A program made the translations under genes and the position numbers. This document shows, one piece after another, positions 2,965 through 13,872 of a stretch of 64,000 nt of DNA. A model generated the notes under the pieces. It saw only the letters and a program-made list of their open reading frames with translations. It made no database searches and was not told the origin of the DNA. Position 1 is the stretch's first letter, and each line of letters begins with the position of its first letter. The stretch lies in the IMG/VR virus record IMGVR_UViG_3300046787_000286, positions 62,001 through 126,000 of that record. The stretch is one strand, 5' to 3'.

Positions 2965-3144
2965 TTAATTACCTTCTAACTGCTCTATTTTATCGGCAGC
3001 TTCTTCAAGTAAGTCAGCAATGCGATCGGGCTTGCCCTCTTCTACACTCTTGCGTCCTTGAATCTGTCGCCTAATCTCTGCTCGCTTACGCAAGCGAAAG
3101 ACTAGGCTTTGTTCACTAACAGGTAGATGACTTTCGTCAATCAT
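2965..3144 (-). CDS. small hypothetical protein (59 aa, below track cut-off)
   Basis: MIDESHLPVSEQSLVFRLRKRAEIRRQIQGRKSVEEGKPDRIADLLEEAADKIEQLEGN; ATGA overlap with the ligase stop. Confidence 0.7.
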   Translation of the reverse strand: MIDESHLPVSEQSLVFRLRKRAEIRRQIQGRKSVEEGKPDRIADLLEEAADKIEQLEGN

Positions 3145-4046
3145 ACTGTTTCCATATAGTTACGTACCCACTCTAAACGAGCTTGCTCGTCCATAGCAGT
3201 ATACTCAACAATGTTAGCACGGATAGCATCCACTAGTGGATAGTATTCTTCGTCTAGTTGGTGCTTGATGTCTTTGTTCAAGTCTACTAACTTGTCTGTA
3301 CGTGGATTGCGAGCAACCCACTTTGAAGTCAAGTAGTATGGTGACTTGATTTTAGCACTCACACCTTCGTTAGTGTAGAATACAAAACCTTCGTGCTTGC
3401 ATTCCTTTGCTAAGTTCTTCAATGCAGCCATTGAAGTTGTTACACTTTCTGGCTTGTGACAGTTAAACAACAATGCTAAGTCTTGCAACACACATGGATC
3501 GTGCCCCACTTTAGATCCAAACTCGTTTTCGCGATAGCCTAAAACATACATGCCTGCCTTCTCTGGAACGATATGAGGGTCACTTGGGTGAACACACTCG
3601 AACATCACAGTCATACCGTCTAGTTCATCGTCACAAAATGCTATACGCCAATCAGCTAAAGAACCATGAGTCAACATCATTTCTTTTGCCAGGTCAACGT
3701 ATGGGCTGTCAGTGCTACCTGTAGTAGAAACTAGCACGTCGCCGTTATACCAAGTTATAGCAACCATAAAGCCGTTGACCTTACGATATGCTAGCACTTC
3801 TGTATCGTCGGCCAGCACTGGTGCTTCCTTTTCGATACCGTAGTTGTAGATCTTTGTGAATGGATATGACACTAGGTTGAAATCCTTGTCCACAATAGAC
3901 CCACGACATTCAGCAATGTATTCATTCCACAGGTTATCGTAGAACACTTTCTTCTTGTACTTTAGCACGTAGATACCGTCGCCGGCTTCCTTCATGTTAA
4001 CCAAGTTAGAAGTAGCTACATACTCCTTCAACTCATCTTTAAACAT
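3141..4046 (-). CDS. T4 Rnl1-like RNA ligase
   Basis: motif I RKVNGF, FECVHP, EGFV, KIKS; CRG and FTKIYNYG N-terminal motifs; likely start MFKDELKEY. Confidence 0.85.
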   Translation of the reverse strand: MFKDELKEYVATSNLVNMKEAGDGIYVLKYKKKVFYDNLWNEYIAECRGSIVDKDFNLVSYPFTKIYNYGIEKEAPVLADDTEVLAYRKVNGFMVAITWYNGDVLVSTTGSTDSPYVDLAKEMMLTHGSLADWRIAFCDDELDGMTVMFECVHPSDPHIVPEKAGMYVLGYRENEFGSKVGHDPCVLQDLALLFNCHKPESVTTSMAALKNLAKECKHEGFVFYTNEGVSAKIKSPYYLTSKWVARNPRTDKLVDLNKDIKHQLDEEYYPLVDAIRANIVEYTAMDEQARLEWVRNYMETV

Positions 4047-4500
4047 ACCAAATTTCCTTAAAGCCTTCTTCTTCAGTTGGCATTTCAAAATTGTTAATCA
4101 TTGAACGCATAACGTTCTCCGGAATTGCCTTACCTGGTCGGCTAGCTAATCGACGTTCGTGTTCTTCCTTTTCGGGAGTACGAAACACAACAGCAATCTT
4201 TTCATAGTTAGACAAAATTGCCAACTTAGACTTGCGAGATTTTGCGCTAGTATTAGTTTGATCCCAAATACAATCTACTTGGTTCGCGTGGCAAACTCGT
4301 GCTTGATTGTCCATCAACTTCATTGCAATAGGCGCATATTCTTTGAACACTTCGTTGTAAGTTTTACCTACACGTTCTGCATGCTCGTCAATAAAACGAT
4401 CGCTAGAGATAACCGGAACACCATCAGTCCAATTTTGTGCTTTGATCCAAGTGCTCTTACCTGAACCTGGCACACCAATTAACATGTAAACTTTTGGCAT
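4039..4500 (-). CDS. polynucleotide-kinase-like P-loop protein (AAA_33)
   Basis: GVPGSGKST, SSD, WDQTN, lid RLASR. Confidence 0.85.
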   Translation of the reverse strand: MPKVYMLIGVPGSGKSTWIKAQNWTDGVPVISSDRFIDEHAERVGKTYNEVFKEYAPIAMKLMDNQARVCHANQVDCIWDQTNTSAKSRKSKLAILSNYEKIAVVFRTPEKEEHERRLASRPGKAIPENVMRSMINNFEMPTEEEGFKEIWYV

Positions 4501-5252: not shown

Positions 5253-5281
5253 GCTAGATCCTTTTGCTTTGTTATGTGTAT

Positions 5282-5310
5282 ATTATAGCAAATCGGGCAT
5301 TTTTGGTCAA
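5282..5310 (-). promoter_or_regulatory. sigma70-type early promoter of the RNA-repair operon
   Basis: TTGACC-17-TATAAT. Confidence 0.8.
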
Positions 5311-5330: not shown

Positions 5331-5813
5331 TTACACATCGCCTTCGCGGGTTGGACTATCTTCTAATCCCCACTCAACGCCATTGATTGTGTGGGGCTCT
5401 GCTTCGTCATAAGTCCAACCCAGCGCCTTCATCATCTTGTGCTTGACAAGTAAGTTAGGACTACGAAATGCTTCAGTGTCATCAAAGCCTAACATTACCC
5501 CAATTTCTGCAACTGCACCCGAACGGCACACTCCTGCGTGGCAATGAACAATAACGTTCATGCGTTGACCGTATGCTTTGAGCAACAAGTCAACCAATTG
5601 CTTGGCCTGTTCATCTGTGCATTTGCATTCGTCTGGAAAGTTATCTTTGTCCTCAGCATCCAAGAATTCAAACTGATGAACTTCACGGAATTCATACTTG
5701 GGAACAGGAAACTCGTATGCTGGATCTACAATCTGAATCAGCATAGAGTTAATGCCGGGGGTAATATGAAACCCTTGACGAATGTCACTCATGCTTACAT
5801 TTTGAATCCACAT
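5331..5813 (-). CDS. protein-tyrosine/dual-specificity phosphatase-like protein
   Basis: HCHAGVCRS (CX5R) and FLD acid loop. Confidence 0.8.
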   Translation of the reverse strand: MWIQNVSMSDIRQGFHITPGINSMLIQIVDPAYEFPVPKYEFREVHQFEFLDAEDKDNFPDECKCTDEQAKQLVDLLLKAYGQRMNVIVHCHAGVCRSGAVAEIGVMLGFDDTEAFRSPNLLVKHKMMKALGWTYDEAEPHTINGVEWGLEDSPTREGDV

Positions 5814-5835
5814 AAAAAATCTCCTTTAATGCGTT

Positions 5836-5864
5836 ATTATAACACTAAAGGAGATTTTGGTCAA
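5836..5864 (-). promoter_or_regulatory. sigma70-type early promoter
   Basis: TTGACC-17-TATAAT. Confidence 0.8.
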
Positions 5865-6685: not shown

Positions 6686-6714
6686 ATTATATATCCAACT
6701 GCATGTGCAGTCAA
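6686..6714 (-). promoter_or_regulatory. sigma70-type promoter inside the tRNA array
   Basis: TTGACT-17-TATAAT. Confidence 0.8.
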
Positions 6715-6808: not shown

Positions 6809-6883
6809 TGGTGGATGTAGCTAGATTCGAACTAGCGGTAGGCACCGTATGAAGATGCTGCATTACCACTTTGCTATACATCC
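6809..6883 (-). tRNA. trnM: tRNA-Met(CAT), non-initiator type
   Basis: loop TTCATAC, no GGG/CCC anticodon stem, CCA. Confidence 0.85.
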
Positions 6884-7000
6884 ATATAGAAGCACTCTCA
6901 AATGCAGGCCTAGGAGGAGTCAAGCTCTGAAACCTTTGCGTATGCATCCACTAGGGTCTCTTCTCCCGCTTTGACTTATGCTAAGAATACTTCTATATGG
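6882..7000 (-). ncRNA. stem-clamped spacer RNA A (between His CCA and Met 5' end)
   Basis: about 17-bp terminal stem CCATATAGAAGTATTCT/AGAGTGCTTCTATATGG with G-U pairs on the minus strand. Confidence 0.65.
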
Positions 7001-7073
7001 GGTGTTAGATGGGGAACGATCCCATACTATCGCTTTCACAGAGCAATGTGCAGACCACTACACTACTAACACC
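6998..7073 (-). tRNA. trnH: tRNA-His(GTG)
   Basis: loop CTGTGAA, G-1/C73, CCA. Confidence 0.9.
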
Positions 7074-7085
7074 ATAAATATTTTT

Positions 7086-7250
7086 GTGAAAACTTACTAC
7101 AGTCAAACACCAGCCGGATTAGACTTTCAATTGAGTCTAAGTGATGATGGCGTGTGTTGCATTATAGTTTACGACACTTACGATTGTGAACTTGTCATGC
7201 GCTATTTCACTAACGTCAATCGAGCTCTACGCTTTATCAACAATCTCTAA
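7086..7250 (+). CDS. small antisense-orientation hypothetical protein (54 aa)
   Basis: GTG start 5 nt after the late-promoter motif ATAAATA (7074-7080); the rest of track ORF 6978-7250 overlaps tRNA-His. Confidence 0.5.
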   Translation: MKTYYSQTPAGLDFQLSLSDDGVCCIIVYDTYDCELVMRYFTNVNRALRFINNL

Positions 7251-7252
7251 TA

Positions 7253-7381
7253 CCATATAGAAACACATTCTTGACGTAAAGGGTCTTTTCATCGCGCTGG
7301 TTAGGCTGCTTCATAGTGAGACTCAACTATTAACCAAGTTGCTCGAAGTCTACTATCAATGATGAATGCATTTCTATATGG
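7253..7381 (-). ncRNA. stem-clamped spacer RNA B
   Basis: CCATATAGAAATGCATTC/GAATGTGTTTCTATATGG terminal stem. Confidence 0.65.
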
Positions 7382-7566
7382 CATTTGTAAAGCCGGCTCA
7401 CTTTGAGCACCCTCGTCCTCCACGGACGGAGTTCTATTGTCATCATCAGTAGCATCCAACAACGCAGGGCCCATTGTTATCTTACTCTACCAACTTATCG
7501 CGTCCCTTGCTCATACCCGTCGGTAATCACTCAGGCTTTCATTTAAACTACAGCTTAACAAATACC
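7379..7566 (-). ncRNA. 188-nt structured RNA closed by a GGTATTTGTTAAGC/GCTTTACAAATGCC stem
   Basis: 14-bp terminal stem ending in ...GCCA; internal hairpins; no plausible ORF. Confidence 0.5.
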
Positions 7567-7692
7567 ATATGAAAACATTCTGTTGTGCTTGAAACAGTGA
7601 CAACCCATCTTCCTGGCAACTTTTACCTGTATAGTCGACTTCAGGGTTACTCGATGAACTCCAGTGTAGTTGTTCAGAATGTTTACATATAG
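7565..7692 (-). ncRNA. stem-clamped spacer RNA C
   Basis: CTATATGTAAACATTCTG/CAGAATGTTTTCATATGG terminal stem. Confidence 0.65.
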
Positions 7693-7792
7693 CAAGCTCA
7701 TTGTAGGCAGGGCTCGAACCTGCACACAGTCCTTACGGATAATGTCGCCCCTATAACGGGGCAATGTCTACCAATTCCATCACTACGAGCTC
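7690..7792 (-). pseudogene. Leu-type class II tRNA-like RNA with non-canonical anticodon loop and a CTA end
   Basis: D-arm GTGATGGAATTGGTAGACA, T-arm GCAGG-TTCGAGC-CCTGC, GCCCC-GTTATA-GGGGC hairpin, bulged acceptor stem. Confidence 0.6.
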
Positions 7793-7840
7793 CTGGAGTT
7801 AATTACTCTCCAGCATGGGTGTTACCTGCAGATAACACTT

Positions 7841-7949
7841 ACCATATGTAAACACACTAACGAACCTGGCTGTGGGCCGCGAACCCACTGTTTTCGCGTG
7901 GCACCAGCAAGTATTGCCACAATTACTGGTTAATGTGTTTGCATATGGT
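7841..7949 (-). ncRNA. stem-clamped spacer RNA D (after Lys CCA)
   Basis: ACCATATGCAAACACATTA/TAGTGTGTTTACATATGGT terminal stem. Confidence 0.7.
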
Positions 7950-8364: not shown

Positions 8365-8619
8365 TTATTCTTCGTCGACTTCTTCTGAGTCGATTACTAC
8401 AATATCTTCTGCATCGATGTCTTCTTCATCGATTTCGTCGAGTACAACTTCTGCTTCTTCAACTACAGGTGCAGCCACAGGTTTCTTAGGTCTACCCCAT
8501 GCCGAGTAACTTGCACCTTCTACTCTACCGCTTACATTCGGTTCAATTTTTTGAATAGTGCCTCCACGAGCTAAGAACTCCTGGATAGCAAGGTCGGTTG
8601 AATTGTCTCTGTTACTCAT
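8365..8619 (-). CDS. hypothetical protein with acidic C-terminal tail
   Basis: AAGGA RBS, start MSNRDNST; IQEFLARGG motif; D/E-rich tail. Confidence 0.7.
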   Translation of the reverse strand: MSNRDNSTDLAIQEFLARGGTIQKIEPNVSGRVEGASYSAWGRPKKPVAAPVVEEAEVVLDEIDEEDIDAEDIVVIDSEEVDEE

Positions 8620-8637
8620 ATGTTCCTTTAAGTTAAT

Positions 8638-8713
8638 TGGTCCGGCGTGCAGGAATCGAACCCACATTCATGAGGTAGAAGCTCATTGTACTATCCATTG
8701 TACTAACGCCAGA
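8638..8713 (-). tRNA. trnR: tRNA-Arg(TCT)
   Basis: loop CTTCTAC, CCA. Confidence 0.95.
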
Positions 8714-8715
8714 TA

Positions 8716-8816
8716 TGGTAGGAGCGGTGGGAATTGAACCCACGTTAACTGCCTTATCTAGACAGTGCTTACGGCTGTATAAGGGCCGCCCTTAGGCCAA
8801 CATTAGCAACACTCCC
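8716..8816 (-). tRNA. atypical 101-nt class II tRNA with TAT anticodon
   Basis: 7-bp acceptor stem, T-arm GTGGG-TTCAATT-CCCAC, loop CTTATAC, about 28-nt variable arm, A73, CCA. Confidence 0.7.
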
Positions 8817-8979: not shown

Positions 8980-8988
8980 ATTGTTGAA

Positions 8989-9206
8989 TTTGTAAGTAGT
9001 TGAGCCACTTTTATCTCAACTTTTTTCCTGATTATACAAGTCCGGACAGGGGGCGGCATGACACTTGGGATACTAAGTCCAGCGTGGCAACCATACTGCA
9101 CCGATCCTTTCGGATCAGCCGGGAGTCGAACCCGCTTGCCTTTTACTACACAACACCTTCGAAGAATATTGAATAGCGTGACATTCTCTTGCTGACACTT
9201 ACAAAA
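8989..9206 (-). ncRNA. about 215-nt structured RNA with an internal T-arm
   Basis: terminal TTTGTAAGT/ACTTACAAA stem; GGG-TTCGACT-CCC at 9121-9133; GATCC-GAAA-GGATC hairpin. Confidence 0.55.
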
Positions 9207-9207
9207 T

Positions 9208-9374: not shown

Positions 9375-9447
9375 TAGGCCCCGGAGGGAGGAATCGAACC
9401 TCCATTGGTTGTATACGGACCGTGTTACCATTACACTACAACCGGGA
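9375..9447 (-). pseudogene. degenerate tRNA-like element
   Basis: intact D-arm GTGTAATGGTAACAC and T-arm GGAGG-TTCGATT-CCTCC; weak anticodon arm; ends in CCTA. Confidence 0.6.
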
Positions 9448-9453
9448 TATAGG

Positions 9454-9604
9454 TTTTTGAGAGTTCCAACTATCTTTCTCAAGGACTCGCCGGGCTTGTC
9501 TCGTATGAGGGAGTTTAAACTACCTTGTGTTGCTACTGGTGTGTCAGTCTCAAGAATAGGGACCTAGCGCACAAGGGACTCAACCTCTACGTCTATCTCA
9601 AAAA
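9454..9604 (-). ncRNA. about 150-nt spacer RNA closed by TTTTTGAGA/TCTCAAAAA
   Basis: 9-bp terminal inverted repeat directly after the tRNA-Thr CCA. Confidence 0.45.
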
Positions 9605-9605
9605 T

Positions 9606-10408: not shown

Positions 10409-10501
10409 ATAAATTGTTCTGGCGGTGCGAAACCATCTGCACACTTACGCCTCTTAGCTTCTCACACCCGGGTGTTTACGCTTGGGTCATCGCCTGAAAC
10501 T

Positions 10502-10592
10502 TGGTGGACAACAATGGGAATCTAACCCACTTCTCCCTCCTATGCTATTAGGAAGTTTCAGCACAGCATCAGTGCATCACGACAGTAAGTCC
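10502..10592 (-). ncRNA. CCA-tailed tRNA-like RNA with altered T-loop
   Basis: GGAC/GTCC + A + CCA; GTGGG-TTAGATT-CCCAT arm; no recognisable anticodon arm. Confidence 0.5.
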
Positions 10593-10599
10593 ATAAACT

Positions 10600-10630
10600 T
10601 GGAAGAGCGTAGGGGAGTCGAACCCCTCTA
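10600..10630 (-). pseudogene. orphan tRNA 3' fragment (T-arm, acceptor strand, U73, CCA), Cys-like
   Basis: AGGGG-TTCGACT-CCCCT-ACGCTCT-T-CCA fused to the HNH stop codon; no matching 5' half seen nearby. Confidence 0.6.
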
Positions 10631-11065
10631 CAAGTCTTCTAAATCTTTTATACTCAAACTGGCTCGGTTAGTTTTTCCACTGCCCCAGCCAGTTTGCAAT
10701 CCTTTTAGCATATTTGCTTTTGCCTCTGGGCTAGCGTTTCTGCTACCCCATGTGTCTGTTTGTGTATGACAGTTAGGACAAAGCCAAGTCACATTGTCAA
10801 TGGTATTGTTTTTTGGATCGCCGTCGATATGTTCTAACTGGAGAACTAATTTCTTGCCATTCCAATCACTAATACCACAACAACTGCACTTATACTCTGA
10901 AAATCTCTTTAGATAAGTTTTAGCATTGCCTTTATTGGCTTTGCCACTTTCCATTATAGTTTTTATCCTATAATCTTGAGTGCATTCTCTACTACAAAAA
11001 TGCCCTGATTGTTGCGAATCAAAATACTTGTATTCTGTGTTGCAACTTTTACACAATCCAATCAT
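10628..11065 (-). CDS. HNH homing endonuclease with Zn-ribbon N-terminus
   Basis: CxxC motifs; LQLEHIDGDPKNN...LCPNCH. Confidence 0.9.
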   Translation of the reverse strand: MIGLCKSCNTEYKYFDSQQSGHFCSRECTQDYRIKTIMESGKANKGNAKTYLKRFSEYKCSCCGISDWNGKKLVLQLEHIDGDPKNNTIDNVTWLCPNCHTQTDTWGSRNASPEAKANMLKGLQTGWGSGKTNRASLSIKDLEDL

Positions 11066-13387: not shown

Positions 13388-13421
13388 CGCCTTGCAAGTT
13401 ACTTACGTTGACACAAAAGGT

Positions 13422-13449
13422 AAAAAAGAATGCCCGCCGAAACGGGCAT
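13422..13449 (-). terminator. intrinsic terminator after the tmRNA coding piece
   Basis: ATGCCCG-TTTCGG-CGGGCAT-TCTTTTTT. Confidence 0.85.
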
Positions 13450-13835
13450 GGTTGTTTAGGTTACAAGGTAAGTCCTACCCCGGGTGCATGGGTTATTAAG
13501 CCAATACAGCAGCACGACGAGCGATTTTTACACCGCGAGCGTTGATAGCTACTTCACCTTTTGTATTTGCGTTTGCATTTACGTTTTTTTGCGTCTACGG
13601 CCGAGTTCCCCCAACCCTACGGCTTCTGCTTTGCCGAGCTGTCCACTTGTTTACTTGTTGCCCTGTCGAAACCATGGCAGGCCCATTATAAAACACACTA
13701 TTCCGTTATCCCACGTCTAGAACGATAACTGGGGCTCCGTAGAGCTAATGTGTTTTATGGTGGACCTGGCGGGAGTCGAACCCGCGTCCAGAACACTTTT
13801 CTCTTTGCTTCTTTCCTTACGGTTTTTACAGCAAT
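13450..13835 (-). ncRNA. ssrA: circularly permuted (two-piece) tmRNA
   Basis: acceptor piece ending GCGGGTTCGACTCCCGCCAGGTCCACCA (13758-13835) precedes the coding piece starting GGGCCTGCCATGGTTTCGAC (13684); G3-U70; tag ORF ANANTKGEVAINARGVKIARRAAVLA (13496-13576); promoter TTGACT-17-TATAAT at 13842-13870. Confidence 0.9.
13683..13760 (-). ncRNA. tmRNA intervening segment, equivalent to stem-clamped spacer I
   Basis: CCATAAAACACATTA/TAGTGTGTTTTATAATGG stem. Confidence 0.7.
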
Positions 13836-13872
13836 ACAACAATTATATATGACTTCTTTTAAAAAGTCAATA

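What the first reader, a model, noticed from the sequence alone, without database searches (positions are those of the whole stretch)
7379..7566. 188-nt RNA ending in CCA, between two clamp elements
Seen: a 14-bp closing stem GGTATTTGTTAAGC/GCTTTACAAATGCC-A, flanked exactly by clamp C upstream and clamp B downstream, so it occupies a tRNA slot in the clamp architecture without being a tRNA. A 75-nt analogue (GGCGATG...CACCGCC-A) is at 10420-10494.
Basis: partly seen in the sequence, partly recalled or inferred. Interest (0 to 1): 0.6.

Follow-up and report, generated by a model that had tools for sequence, protein, structure and literature searches.

The report
New structured RNA in phage tRNA array
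The 188-base stretch is a real, previously uncatalogued structured non-coding RNA. It sits like a gene inside the tRNA arrays of some uncultured giant phages and is probably cut out by the tRNA-processing enzymes; its function is unknown.

Summary
On the minus strand, 7568-7378 folds into a five-helix RNA closed by a 17-18 bp terminal helix. It lies between two about 20-bp "clamp" hairpins in a giant-phage tRNA array.

Eleven distinct homologues were found in viral and metagenome contigs. 94% of cells in 52 predicted pairs are paired, and 24 pairs show compensatory changes; 0 of 500 shuffles reached these values. It is not a tRNA, matches no Rfam 15 family and is not coding.

In 9 of 11 copies found, the last paired base abuts base +1 of a downstream tRNA. 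Where a called tRNA lies directly upstream (5 copies), it ends 0-6 nt before the helix. The RNA therefore fills a tRNA slot and is probably released by RNase P and tRNA 3' maturation.

- The "CCA" end exists only in this window and belongs to the clamp motif.
- The clamps are a separate hairpin family and flank only 3 of 11 members.
- The 75-nt "analogue" shows no significant fold and no homologue.

The closest known cases are T4 RNAC/RNAD and the GOLLD/ROOL RNAs, which share the setting but show no homology. Function is unknown. A conserved GC palindrome in one apical loop hints at dimerisation. No expression data could be obtained.

The parts
7378..7568 (-). The whole RNA as defined by its terminal helix (191 nt).
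   Evidence: Covariance-model hits of 219-237 bits. An 11-member alignment A9 with 52 pairs. Coordinates mapped.
7551..7568 (-). P1 5' strand (AUGGUAUUUGUUAAGCUG).
   Evidence: Pairs with 7378-7395. 17 pairs, 98% of cells paired, 8 pairs with compensatory changes.
7378..7395 (-). P1 3' strand (CGGCUUUACAAAUGCCAU). Its last 4 nt overlap the downstream clamp arm.
   Evidence: In the 455-nt precursor fold the clamps take over the outer P1 bases.
7536..7550 (-). J1/2, a conserved unpaired strand (UAGUUUAAAUGAAAG).
   Evidence: Conserved in all members. Part of it was required by the search patterns, so that part's invariance is biased.
7504..7535 (-). P2, a composite hairpin with an invariant CGACGG apex (GACG loop).
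   Evidence: P2c has 3 of 4 pairs covarying (UA/CG, AU/CG/GC, CG/UA/AU). The P2a/b pairs are invariant.
7445..7494 (-). P3: a covarying 8-bp base helix, a variable distal stem and an apical loop. The loop carries the palindrome GGGCCC at 7467-7472.
   Evidence: 5 of 8 base pairs show compensatory changes. The loop has GGGCCC in 10 members and GGCGCC in L089.
7429..7444 (-). J3/4, a conserved purine-rich strand (GAUGACAAUAGAACUC).
   Evidence: GAUGRCA is conserved in most members of A8 and A9.
7414..7428 (-). P4 hairpin (CGUCC-GUGGA-GGACG).
   Evidence: 4 of 5 pairs covary. The loop is GNGGA in most members.
7396..7408 (-). P5 hairpin (GCUCA-AAG-UGAGC). Its 3' strand runs straight into the P1 3' strand.
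   Evidence: 100% of cells paired. The basal pair changes from G-C to A-U in L089 and L138, and loop length varies.
7565..7692 (-). Upstream clamp hairpin (arms CUAUAUGUAAACAUUCUG / CAGAAUGUUUUCAUAUGG). Its last bases are the first bases of the RNA.
   Evidence: Fold z = -2.3.
7253..7381 (-). Downstream clamp hairpin (arms CCAUAUAGAAAUGCAUUC / GAAUGUGUUUCUAUAUGG).
   Evidence: Fold z = -5.4. Two G.U pairs form only on this strand.
7842..7948 (-). Third clamp hairpin. It starts at the CCA of tRNA-Lys(uuu).
6882..7000 (-). Fourth clamp hairpin, between tRNA-His and tRNA-Met.

Best explanation
It is a member of a new family of about 190-nt structured non-coding RNAs carried in the tRNA arrays of one clade of uncultured giant phages. 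The window's record is 214 kb and 62% complete; complete relatives reach 364 kb.

Shown:
- The fold is a five-way junction. A long terminal helix P1 carries four hairpins, P2 to P5.
- The strands J1/2 and J3/4, the GACG apex of P2 and a GC-palindromic loop on P3 are nearly invariant.
- The RNA is on the same strand as the tRNAs.
- It has no sigma-70-like promoter or terminator of its own.

Inferred biogenesis:
- It is transcribed by host RNA polymerase as part of a long tRNA precursor and released by tRNA punctuation.
- RNase P cutting at +1 of the next tRNA makes its 3' end.
- 3' maturation of the preceding tRNA makes its 5' end.
- In this window, cleavage in the flanking about 20-bp clamp hairpins, which look like RNase III substrates, would do both jobs.
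- The two ends are then locked in the flush P1 helix, which should protect the RNA from exonucleases.

Inferred role (weakly supported): it acts in trans through its invariant unpaired core, binding a protein or RNA of the translation, tRNA or defence machinery. It may act as a dimer through the P3 loop.
For: Structure and family:
- The fold beats shuffles at z = -3.7.
- 11 distinct members share 64-96% identity.
- 94.3% of cells are paired against 82.5% in shuffles. 24 of 52 pairs have changes on both sides against 12 in shuffles, with 0 of 500 shuffles reaching either value. Sliding the partners drops pairing to 36-48%.
- G.U pairs and every covariance-model hit lie on the tRNA strand.

Placement and processing:
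- The gap to +1 of a downstream tRNA is 0 nt in 9 of 11 copies, with five different downstream tRNAs. In the 5 copies with a called tRNA directly upstream, it ends 0-6 nt before P1 (one overlaps by 1 nt).
- No sigma-70-like promoter lies directly upstream. No minus-strand terminator was found from the RNA up to 11648. Near-consensus promoters lie further upstream.

Not coding, not a known family:
- The 57-aa frame is broken by indels in L012. The AUG of the AUG-AAA-GCC-UGA string is ACG in L102 and L138.
- There is no Rfam match at E <= 10 in three members.

Precedent: T4 rnaD starts 1 nt after tRNA-Arg and rnaC 6 nt after rnaD. Both are stable RNAs of unknown role (PMC3014915, PMC9697503).
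Against: - There is no expression or end-mapping data.
- The family is sporadic. It is absent from 38 related records, including a 100%-complete and a 92%-complete genome, so it is dispensable.
- All members were found through patterns from the J1/2-P2 core or the P3 loop. The invariance of those blocks is therefore partly built in.
- Nothing identifies a partner. No phage RNase III, CCA-adding enzyme or Ro60 was found in the incomplete record.
- The sequences are related to each other, so shuffle controls overstate significance somewhat.
Confidence: 0.7

Rival explanations
1. It is only a structured spacer. It acts in cis to keep neighbouring tRNAs folding and being processed correctly, and has no function once released.
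For: It always fills the space between array genes exactly. The array also uses other structured spacers, the clamp hairpins.
Against: Unpaired strands and loop sequences stay nearly invariant while overall identity falls to 64%. The same RNA sits beside five different downstream tRNAs. It sits beside a protein gene in L089 and between clamps here. Most tRNA junctions in these arrays need no such spacer.
Confidence: 0.12
2. It is a selfish or mobile cassette. The terminal inverted repeats (P1 at DNA level) serve transposition or homing, and the RNA fold is incidental.
For: Presence is patchy among close relatives and the neighbours differ. Homing-type endonuclease genes, PD-(D/E)XK and HNH, lie in the array. 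The termini read AUAU...AUAU.
Against: Internal helices P2c, P3, P4 and P5 covary, which DNA-level repeats do not explain. P1 tolerates G.U pairs, which form only on the transcribed strand. No transposase is associated with it.
Confidence: 0.06
3. It is a self-cleaving or processing ribozyme that creates the ends of the adjoining tRNAs.
For: Both boundaries coincide with tRNA ends. It has a complex junction with an invariant core.
Against: There is no match to any ribozyme family in Rfam 15. The hammerhead-like CUGAUGA is absent from half the members. In the window and in L089 no tRNA follows it. The 5' and 3' ends pair with each other, unlike HDV-type folds. Host RNase P already explains the 3' cut.
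Confidence: 0.04
4. It is a degenerate or intron-bearing tRNA, or a small protein gene.
For: It lies in a tRNA slot. This copy ends GCCA. A 57-aa frame spans 7474-7301.
Against: ARAGORN and the Rfam tRNA model do not call it, and it has no T arm or D arm. CCA is not conserved. The frame shifts in L012 and is no better conserved than the upstream half.
Confidence: 0.02

Closest known systems
Phage T4 RNAC and RNAD (species 1 and 2 stable RNAs in the tRNA gene cluster)
   Same: They are small stable RNAs of 139 and 119 nt encoded on the tRNA strand inside a phage tRNA cluster. They directly abut a tRNA gene: rnaD starts 1 nt after tRNA-Arg and rnaC 6 nt after rnaD. Their roles are still unknown (PMC3014915, PMC9697503). 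A homing endonuclease gene lies in the same cluster (PMC2330249).
   Different: There is no sequence or structure similarity. Model R2 run with filters off gives only noise on the T4 region, 1.7 bits at rnaC. RNAC carries a tRNA-type T arm (CCGGGUUCGAAUCCCGG) and this RNA has none. This RNA is larger, with a five-way junction and a 17-bp closing helix.
GOLLD and ROOL large ornate RNAs
   Same: They are structured RNAs of unknown function found in phages and prophages, often near tRNA islands. They were defined by covariation and shown to form RNA-only homo-oligomers (PMC12286853). The GC palindrome kept in the P3 loop here would allow self-association.
   Different: They are about 580 to over 800 nt, against 190 nt here. 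No Rfam match to either was found. Oligomerisation here is only a hypothesis, resting on one sequence replacement.
Functional tRNA-operon spacers and the tRNA punctuation mode of RNA release (my own knowledge: the E. coli 3'ETS-leuZ sponge; mitochondrial transcripts)
   Same: An RNA lying between tRNAs is set free by RNase P and the tRNA 3' nucleases. It then acts on its own.
   Different: Those spacers are short and unstructured, or are mRNAs or rRNAs. This is a dedicated, highly structured RNA that moves between different tRNA neighbours.
Bacterial Y RNAs (YrlA)
   Same: They have a long terminal helix formed by the 5' and 3' ends plus a structured module. They occur in some phages (PMC4201824).
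   Different: There is no tRNA-like module and no Rfam match. No Ro60/TROVE gene was found in the record, although the record is incomplete.

Membership tests
tRNA (Rfam RF00005) | Cloverleaf with D, anticodon and T arms, detected by ARAGORN or the tRNA covariance model. | tested here: not met
   33 tRNA or tmRNA calls and 30 Rfam tRNA hits in the window, none at 7378-7568. No tRNA hit at E <= 10.
tRNA (Rfam RF00005) | Encoded or added 3' CCA after a discriminator base. | tested here: not met
   GCCA occurs only in the window copy. The other ten end AAUAU, UAUUAU or UACUAU.
T4 RNAC/RNAD-type stable RNAs | Encoded inside a phage tRNA cluster on the tRNA strand, abutting tRNA genes. | tested here: met
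T4 RNAC/RNAD-type stable RNAs | Homology to T4 rnaC or rnaD. | tested here: not met
   R2 with filters off on T4 68000-76000 scores at most 11.5 bits, elsewhere in the region, and 1.7 bits at rnaC.
T4 RNAC/RNAD-type stable RNAs | Accumulates as a stable processed RNA during infection. | not testable with these tools
GOLLD / ROOL | Match to the Rfam covariance models. | tested here: not met
   No hit at gathering score or at E <= 10.
GOLLD / ROOL | RNA-only homo-oligomer. | not testable with these tools
   The only hint is a 6-nt GC palindrome in the P3 loop: GGGCCC in 10 members and GGCGCC in L089.
Bacterial RNase P RNA | Conserved CR-I, CR-IV and CR-V regions with the P4 long-range helix. | tested here: not met
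   No Rfam RNase P hit. The P4-like pairing GAAAGCC with GGCUUU is lost in L089, L138 and the group with GGCUUAA, whereas the competing P1 pairing covaries.
Small self-cleaving ribozymes (hammerhead, HDV-like, twister, pistol, hatchet) | Conserved catalytic core and fold. | tested here: not met
   No Rfam hit. CUGAUGA is present only in the window/L012 group. Cleavage activity itself was not testable.
Bacterial Y RNA (YrlA) with Ro60 | Ro60/TROVE protein partner and a tRNA-like module. | tested here: inconclusive
   No TROVE match in the 214-kb record, which is only 62% complete. No Rfam hit.
RNase III processing hairpins (for the clamps) | About two turns of double-stranded RNA in the transcript. 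| tested here: met
   Terminal stems of 18-22 bp in all four hairpins. Across 31 distinct copies there are 41 G.U against 20 A.C on the tRNA strand, p about 0.01, though the copies are not independent.
RNase III processing hairpins (for the clamps) | Cleavage by RNase III. | not testable with these tools
   No phage RNase III gene was found. Host enzyme is assumed.

The most novel reading that the evidence does not exclude
The RNA works as a homodimer, or a higher assembly, held together by a kissing interaction between the GC-palindromic apical loops of P3. That would make it a small, tractable relative in kind of the RNA-only assemblies formed by ROOL and GOLLD. In this reading it sequesters a tRNA-related or defence-related factor during infection. 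The one lineage that replaced the whole distal P3 (L089) still presents a 6-nt GC palindrome, GGCGCC instead of GGGCCC, in an 8-nt loop.
Probability: 0.15. Interest if true: 0.75.

Novelty: new member of a known kind. Interest (0 to 1): 0.55.

Why it matters
Phage tRNA clusters have long been known to carry stable RNAs of unknown function: T4 RNAC and RNAD for about 50 years, and more recently GOLLD and ROOL. This adds a compact, covariation-supported family with a clear biogenesis model and a testable self-association motif.

The same array also holds at least two or three further conserved non-tRNA RNAs and a conserved processing-hairpin family. Giant-phage tRNA arrays therefore look like general launch pads for structured RNAs, not only tRNA supply depots. 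A 190-nt RNA is small enough for probing, structure determination and pull-downs, which could help with the wider question of what these RNAs do.

Tried and rejected
- **Known families:** Rfam at gathering score and at E <= 10 on three members gave only noise-level snoRNA/sRNA/lncRNA hits.
- **RNase P-like reading:** the strings GAAAGCC, ACAAUAGAA and CCGGCUUUA resemble CR-I, CR-IV and CR-V. They cannot be threaded on the P RNA fold, and the P4-like pairing is not maintained while P1 covaries.
- **Hammerhead reading of CUGAUGA...GAAA:** the string is not conserved.
- **HDV-like topology:** the ends pair with each other, so it does not fit.
- **SRP domain IV-like AGCA/GGAA motifs:** no model hit.
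- **Coding:** the 57-aa ORF and the mini-ORF AUG-AAA-GCC-UGA both fail on conservation.
- **Y RNA:** no TROVE gene found.
- **Homology to T4 rnaC/rnaD:** none.
- **Cellular homologues:** 33 pattern matches in 185,579 species genomes, about the chance expectation, and none fits the model.
- **Antisense targets in the phage record:** only chance-level 10-11-mers. A 14-nt identity to tRNA D-arm sequence in P3 is not conserved in the family.
- **Chance pattern matches:** L085-L087 and L139-L140 matched the search patterns but did not fit the covariance models; L085 and L139, the two read, look like coding sequence.
- **Weak model hits:** L002 (E = 0.31) and L058 (E = 0.43) were not followed up and are treated as noise.
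- **Clamps as promoters:** the motif resembles a T7-type ...CTATA|GG promoter. I considered this less likely than RNA hairpins, because the inverted partner, the G.U pairs on the sense strand and the overlap with tRNA CCA ends all point to RNA.

Full report
**Setting.** The window is bases 62001-126000 of a 214-kb IMG/VR virus record that CheckV rates 62% complete.
- Its minus strand carries a dense RNA gene array from about 15.2 kb down to 0.2 kb. ARAGORN tRNAs there, and Rfam calls a permuted tmRNA at 91 bits.
- Genes typical of phage tRNA regions are interspersed: an Rnl1-type RNA ligase, a phosphatase, an RNase H-like protein, PD-(D/E)XK and HNH endonucleases, and a small protein with a SutA RNA-polymerase-binding motif.
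- Relatives are plentiful in IMG/VR. 186 contigs encode the ligase at 73-92% identity, and one complete genome is 364 kb.
- The nearest cultured phages are distant. The ligase is 47% identical to that of Acidovorax phage ACP17.

**The observation.** Read on the minus strand, 7566->7379 begins GGUAUUUGUUAAGC and ends GCUUUACAAAUGCC-A, as reported.
- The 188-mer folds at -61.1 kcal/mol with z = -3.7.
- On both sides lie hairpins of 128-129 nt whose outer 18-22 bp form a near-perfect stem. The consensus is CCAUAURNAAACAYNYU...ARNRUGUUUNYAUAUGG.
- Four such hairpins lie at 6882-7000, 7253-7381, 7565-7692 and 7842-7948. Their interiors are unrelated.
- In the 214-kb record, good copies occur only in this stretch. 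Related contigs hold 31 distinct copies. These usually start at the CCA of a tRNA, often tRNA-Lys, and end at the first bases of the next gene.
- On the tRNA strand their stems show 41 G.U against 20 A.C. This favours a hairpin in the RNA rather than a DNA element, although the copies are not independent.

**Homologues.**
- BLAST and a first covariance model found the RNA in only one of 40 related records.
- Pattern scans built from conserved blocks then found more copies. L089, L102 and L138 came from IMG/VR. Seven contigs, six of them distinct, came from the metagenome collection.
- All score 159-220 bits with model R2.
- Complete or near-complete relatives lack it. 33 pattern matches in bacterial and archaeal genomes are about the chance expectation, and none fits the model.

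**Structure.** The 11-member alignment A9 has 64-96% pairwise identity.
- It supports seven helical segments with 52 pairs. 94.3% of cells are paired, against 82.5% in shuffles and 36-48% with slid partners.
- 24 pairs change on both sides, against 12 in shuffles. 0 of 500 shuffles reach the observed values.
- In window coordinates the elements are:
  - P1: 7568-7551 with 7395-7378.
  - P2: 7535-7504, with an invariant CGACGG apex.
  - P3: 7494-7445.
  - P4: 7428-7414.
  - P5: 7408-7396, stacking directly on P1.
- The joining strands J1/2 and J3/4 are conserved.
- G.U pairs and all model hits are on the tRNA strand.
- The distal half of P3 is poorly conserved as a helix (74% paired). It nevertheless presents CAAUGGGCCCUGCG in nine members and CAAGGGGCCCUGCG in L138. 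L089 has a wholly different stem, whose 8-nt loop contains GGCGCC.

**What it is not.**
- It is not a tRNA and not any Rfam 15 family.
- It is not coding. The 57-aa frame suffers compensating 1-nt indels in L012, and the upstream half is equally conserved. The short AUG-AAA-GCC-UGA frame reads ACG in two members.
- It is not homologous to T4 rnaC or rnaD.
- RNase P-like, hammerhead-like and SRP-like strings were each examined. They fail on covariation, conservation or topology.

**Position and likely biogenesis.**
- In 9 of 11 copies the nucleotide after the last P1 pair is +1 of a tRNA: Met, Asn, Leu-CAA or Leu-GAG.
- In 5 copies a called tRNA ends 0-6 nt before P1. In three others an uncalled tRNA-like 3' end lies there, and in the window, L089 and L102 a clamp hairpin precedes the RNA.
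- The RNA therefore fills an inter-tRNA space completely, with different neighbours in different phages.
- In this window and in L089 and L102 a clamp hairpin lies upstream. Downstream there is a clamp here, a protein gene with an AAGGAGG ribosome-binding site in L089, and tRNA-Met in L102.
- No sigma-70-like promoter precedes the RNA, and no minus-strand terminator was found from the RNA up to 11648. Near-consensus promoters lie further upstream and downstream.
- From the established action of RNase P at tRNA +1, the 3' end of the RNA is inferred to be made by that cut. The 5' end is inferred to come from 3' maturation of the preceding tRNA, or here from cleavage of the clamp stems.
- In a fold of the 455-nt precursor, the clamps form fully and borrow the outer P1 bases. 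P1 would then close only after processing. This step is inference.
- No phage RNase III or CCA-adding enzyme was detected.

- The terminal CCA is the start of the clamp motif and is not shared by any homologue.
- The 75-nt element at 10420-10494 has z = -0.84 and no homologue.

**Function.** Nothing here identifies a partner.
- The strongest clues are the invariant unpaired core, the family's dispensability, and its exclusive association with tRNA arrays that also carry an RNA ligase and a phosphatase.
- I rate a trans-acting stable RNA, a binder or decoy for a translation, tRNA or defence factor, as the most likely role.
- The palindromic P3 loop gives a modest, testable case for dimerisation.
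- A purely cis spacer, a mobile cassette and a ribozyme are less likely, for the reasons listed under the rival explanations.

**Comparison with known systems.**
- The setting matches T4 RNAC and RNAD. They abut tRNA-Arg in the T4 cluster and their roles are unknown (PMC3014915, PMC9697503).
- It also matches the tRNA-island association of GOLLD and ROOL (PMC12286853).
- No homology to any of them was found, so this is a new family of a known kind.

**Limits.**
- There are no expression data.
- Members were found through sequence patterns, so the invariance of the J1/2-P2 core and of the P3 loop is partly built in.
- The sample is small and phylogenetically related.

Noticed in passing
window 9446-9605 (-): A second conserved structured RNA of about 155 nt lies in the array, with no Rfam hit at gathering score. 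It is found in 19 related loci. Alignment shows a closing helix UUUUGAGA/UCUCAAAA and several clearly covarying helices.
   Followed up: partly
window 7690-7842 (-): The 'tRNA-???' call at 7699-7789 is a conserved tRNA-like RNA. It has a good T arm, a 6-nt 'anticodon' loop and a bulged acceptor. A 53-nt 5' extension forms two covarying hairpins. Homologues were hit in 6 related loci (4 aligned), and the arrangement is reminiscent of T4 RNAC.
   Followed up: partly
window 8980-9207 (-): A 228-nt conserved non-tRNA segment with a T-arm-like GGGUUCGACUCCC hairpin. Homologues were hit in 8 related loci (5 aligned). Its nature is unknown.
   Followed up: partly
window 10594-10640 and 10503-10591 (-): An orphan tRNA 3' half (T arm, acceptor strand and CCA) lies at the 3' end of the HNH endonuclease ORF (10628-11065), overlapping its last codons. 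It is followed by an 89-nt tRNA-like sequence that neither ARAGORN nor Rfam calls. This may be debris of endonuclease-mediated rearrangement.
   Followed up: no
window 13405-13850 (-): A permuted (two-piece type) tmRNA gene lies in the phage array (Rfam RF04321, 91 bits).
   Followed up: no
window 5836-5864, 6686-6714, 7161-7190 and 11.3-15.2 kb (-): There are many near-consensus sigma-70-type promoters on the array strand, two of them 12 of 12. They include a repeated promoter-containing block at 347-376, 5281-5310 and 5835-5864. This suggests host RNA polymerase transcribes the array. The unstructured 181 nt at 7073-7253 (z = +0.3) carries one of these promoters upstream of tRNA-His.
   Followed up: partly
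window 3141-4088, 5331-5813, 2039-2530, 8365-8667 (-): Beside and within the array lie an Rnl1-type RNA ligase, a DSP/PTP-type phosphatase and an RNase H-like protein. There is also a 100-aa protein with a SutA RNA-polymerase-binding motif. Together they look like a tRNA repair and host-takeover island.
   Followed up: no
window 8719-8816 and 9379-9445 (-): Rfam calls two extra tRNAs that ARAGORN misses. One is 98 nt long and may carry an insertion or intron. The other is 67 nt with a weak score of 32.8 bits.
   Followed up: no
L012:2531-2597: Part of the interior of the window's 7253-7381 clamp hairpin recurs at 85% identity at a different array position in a related phage. The hairpins may therefore move as units.
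   Followed up: no
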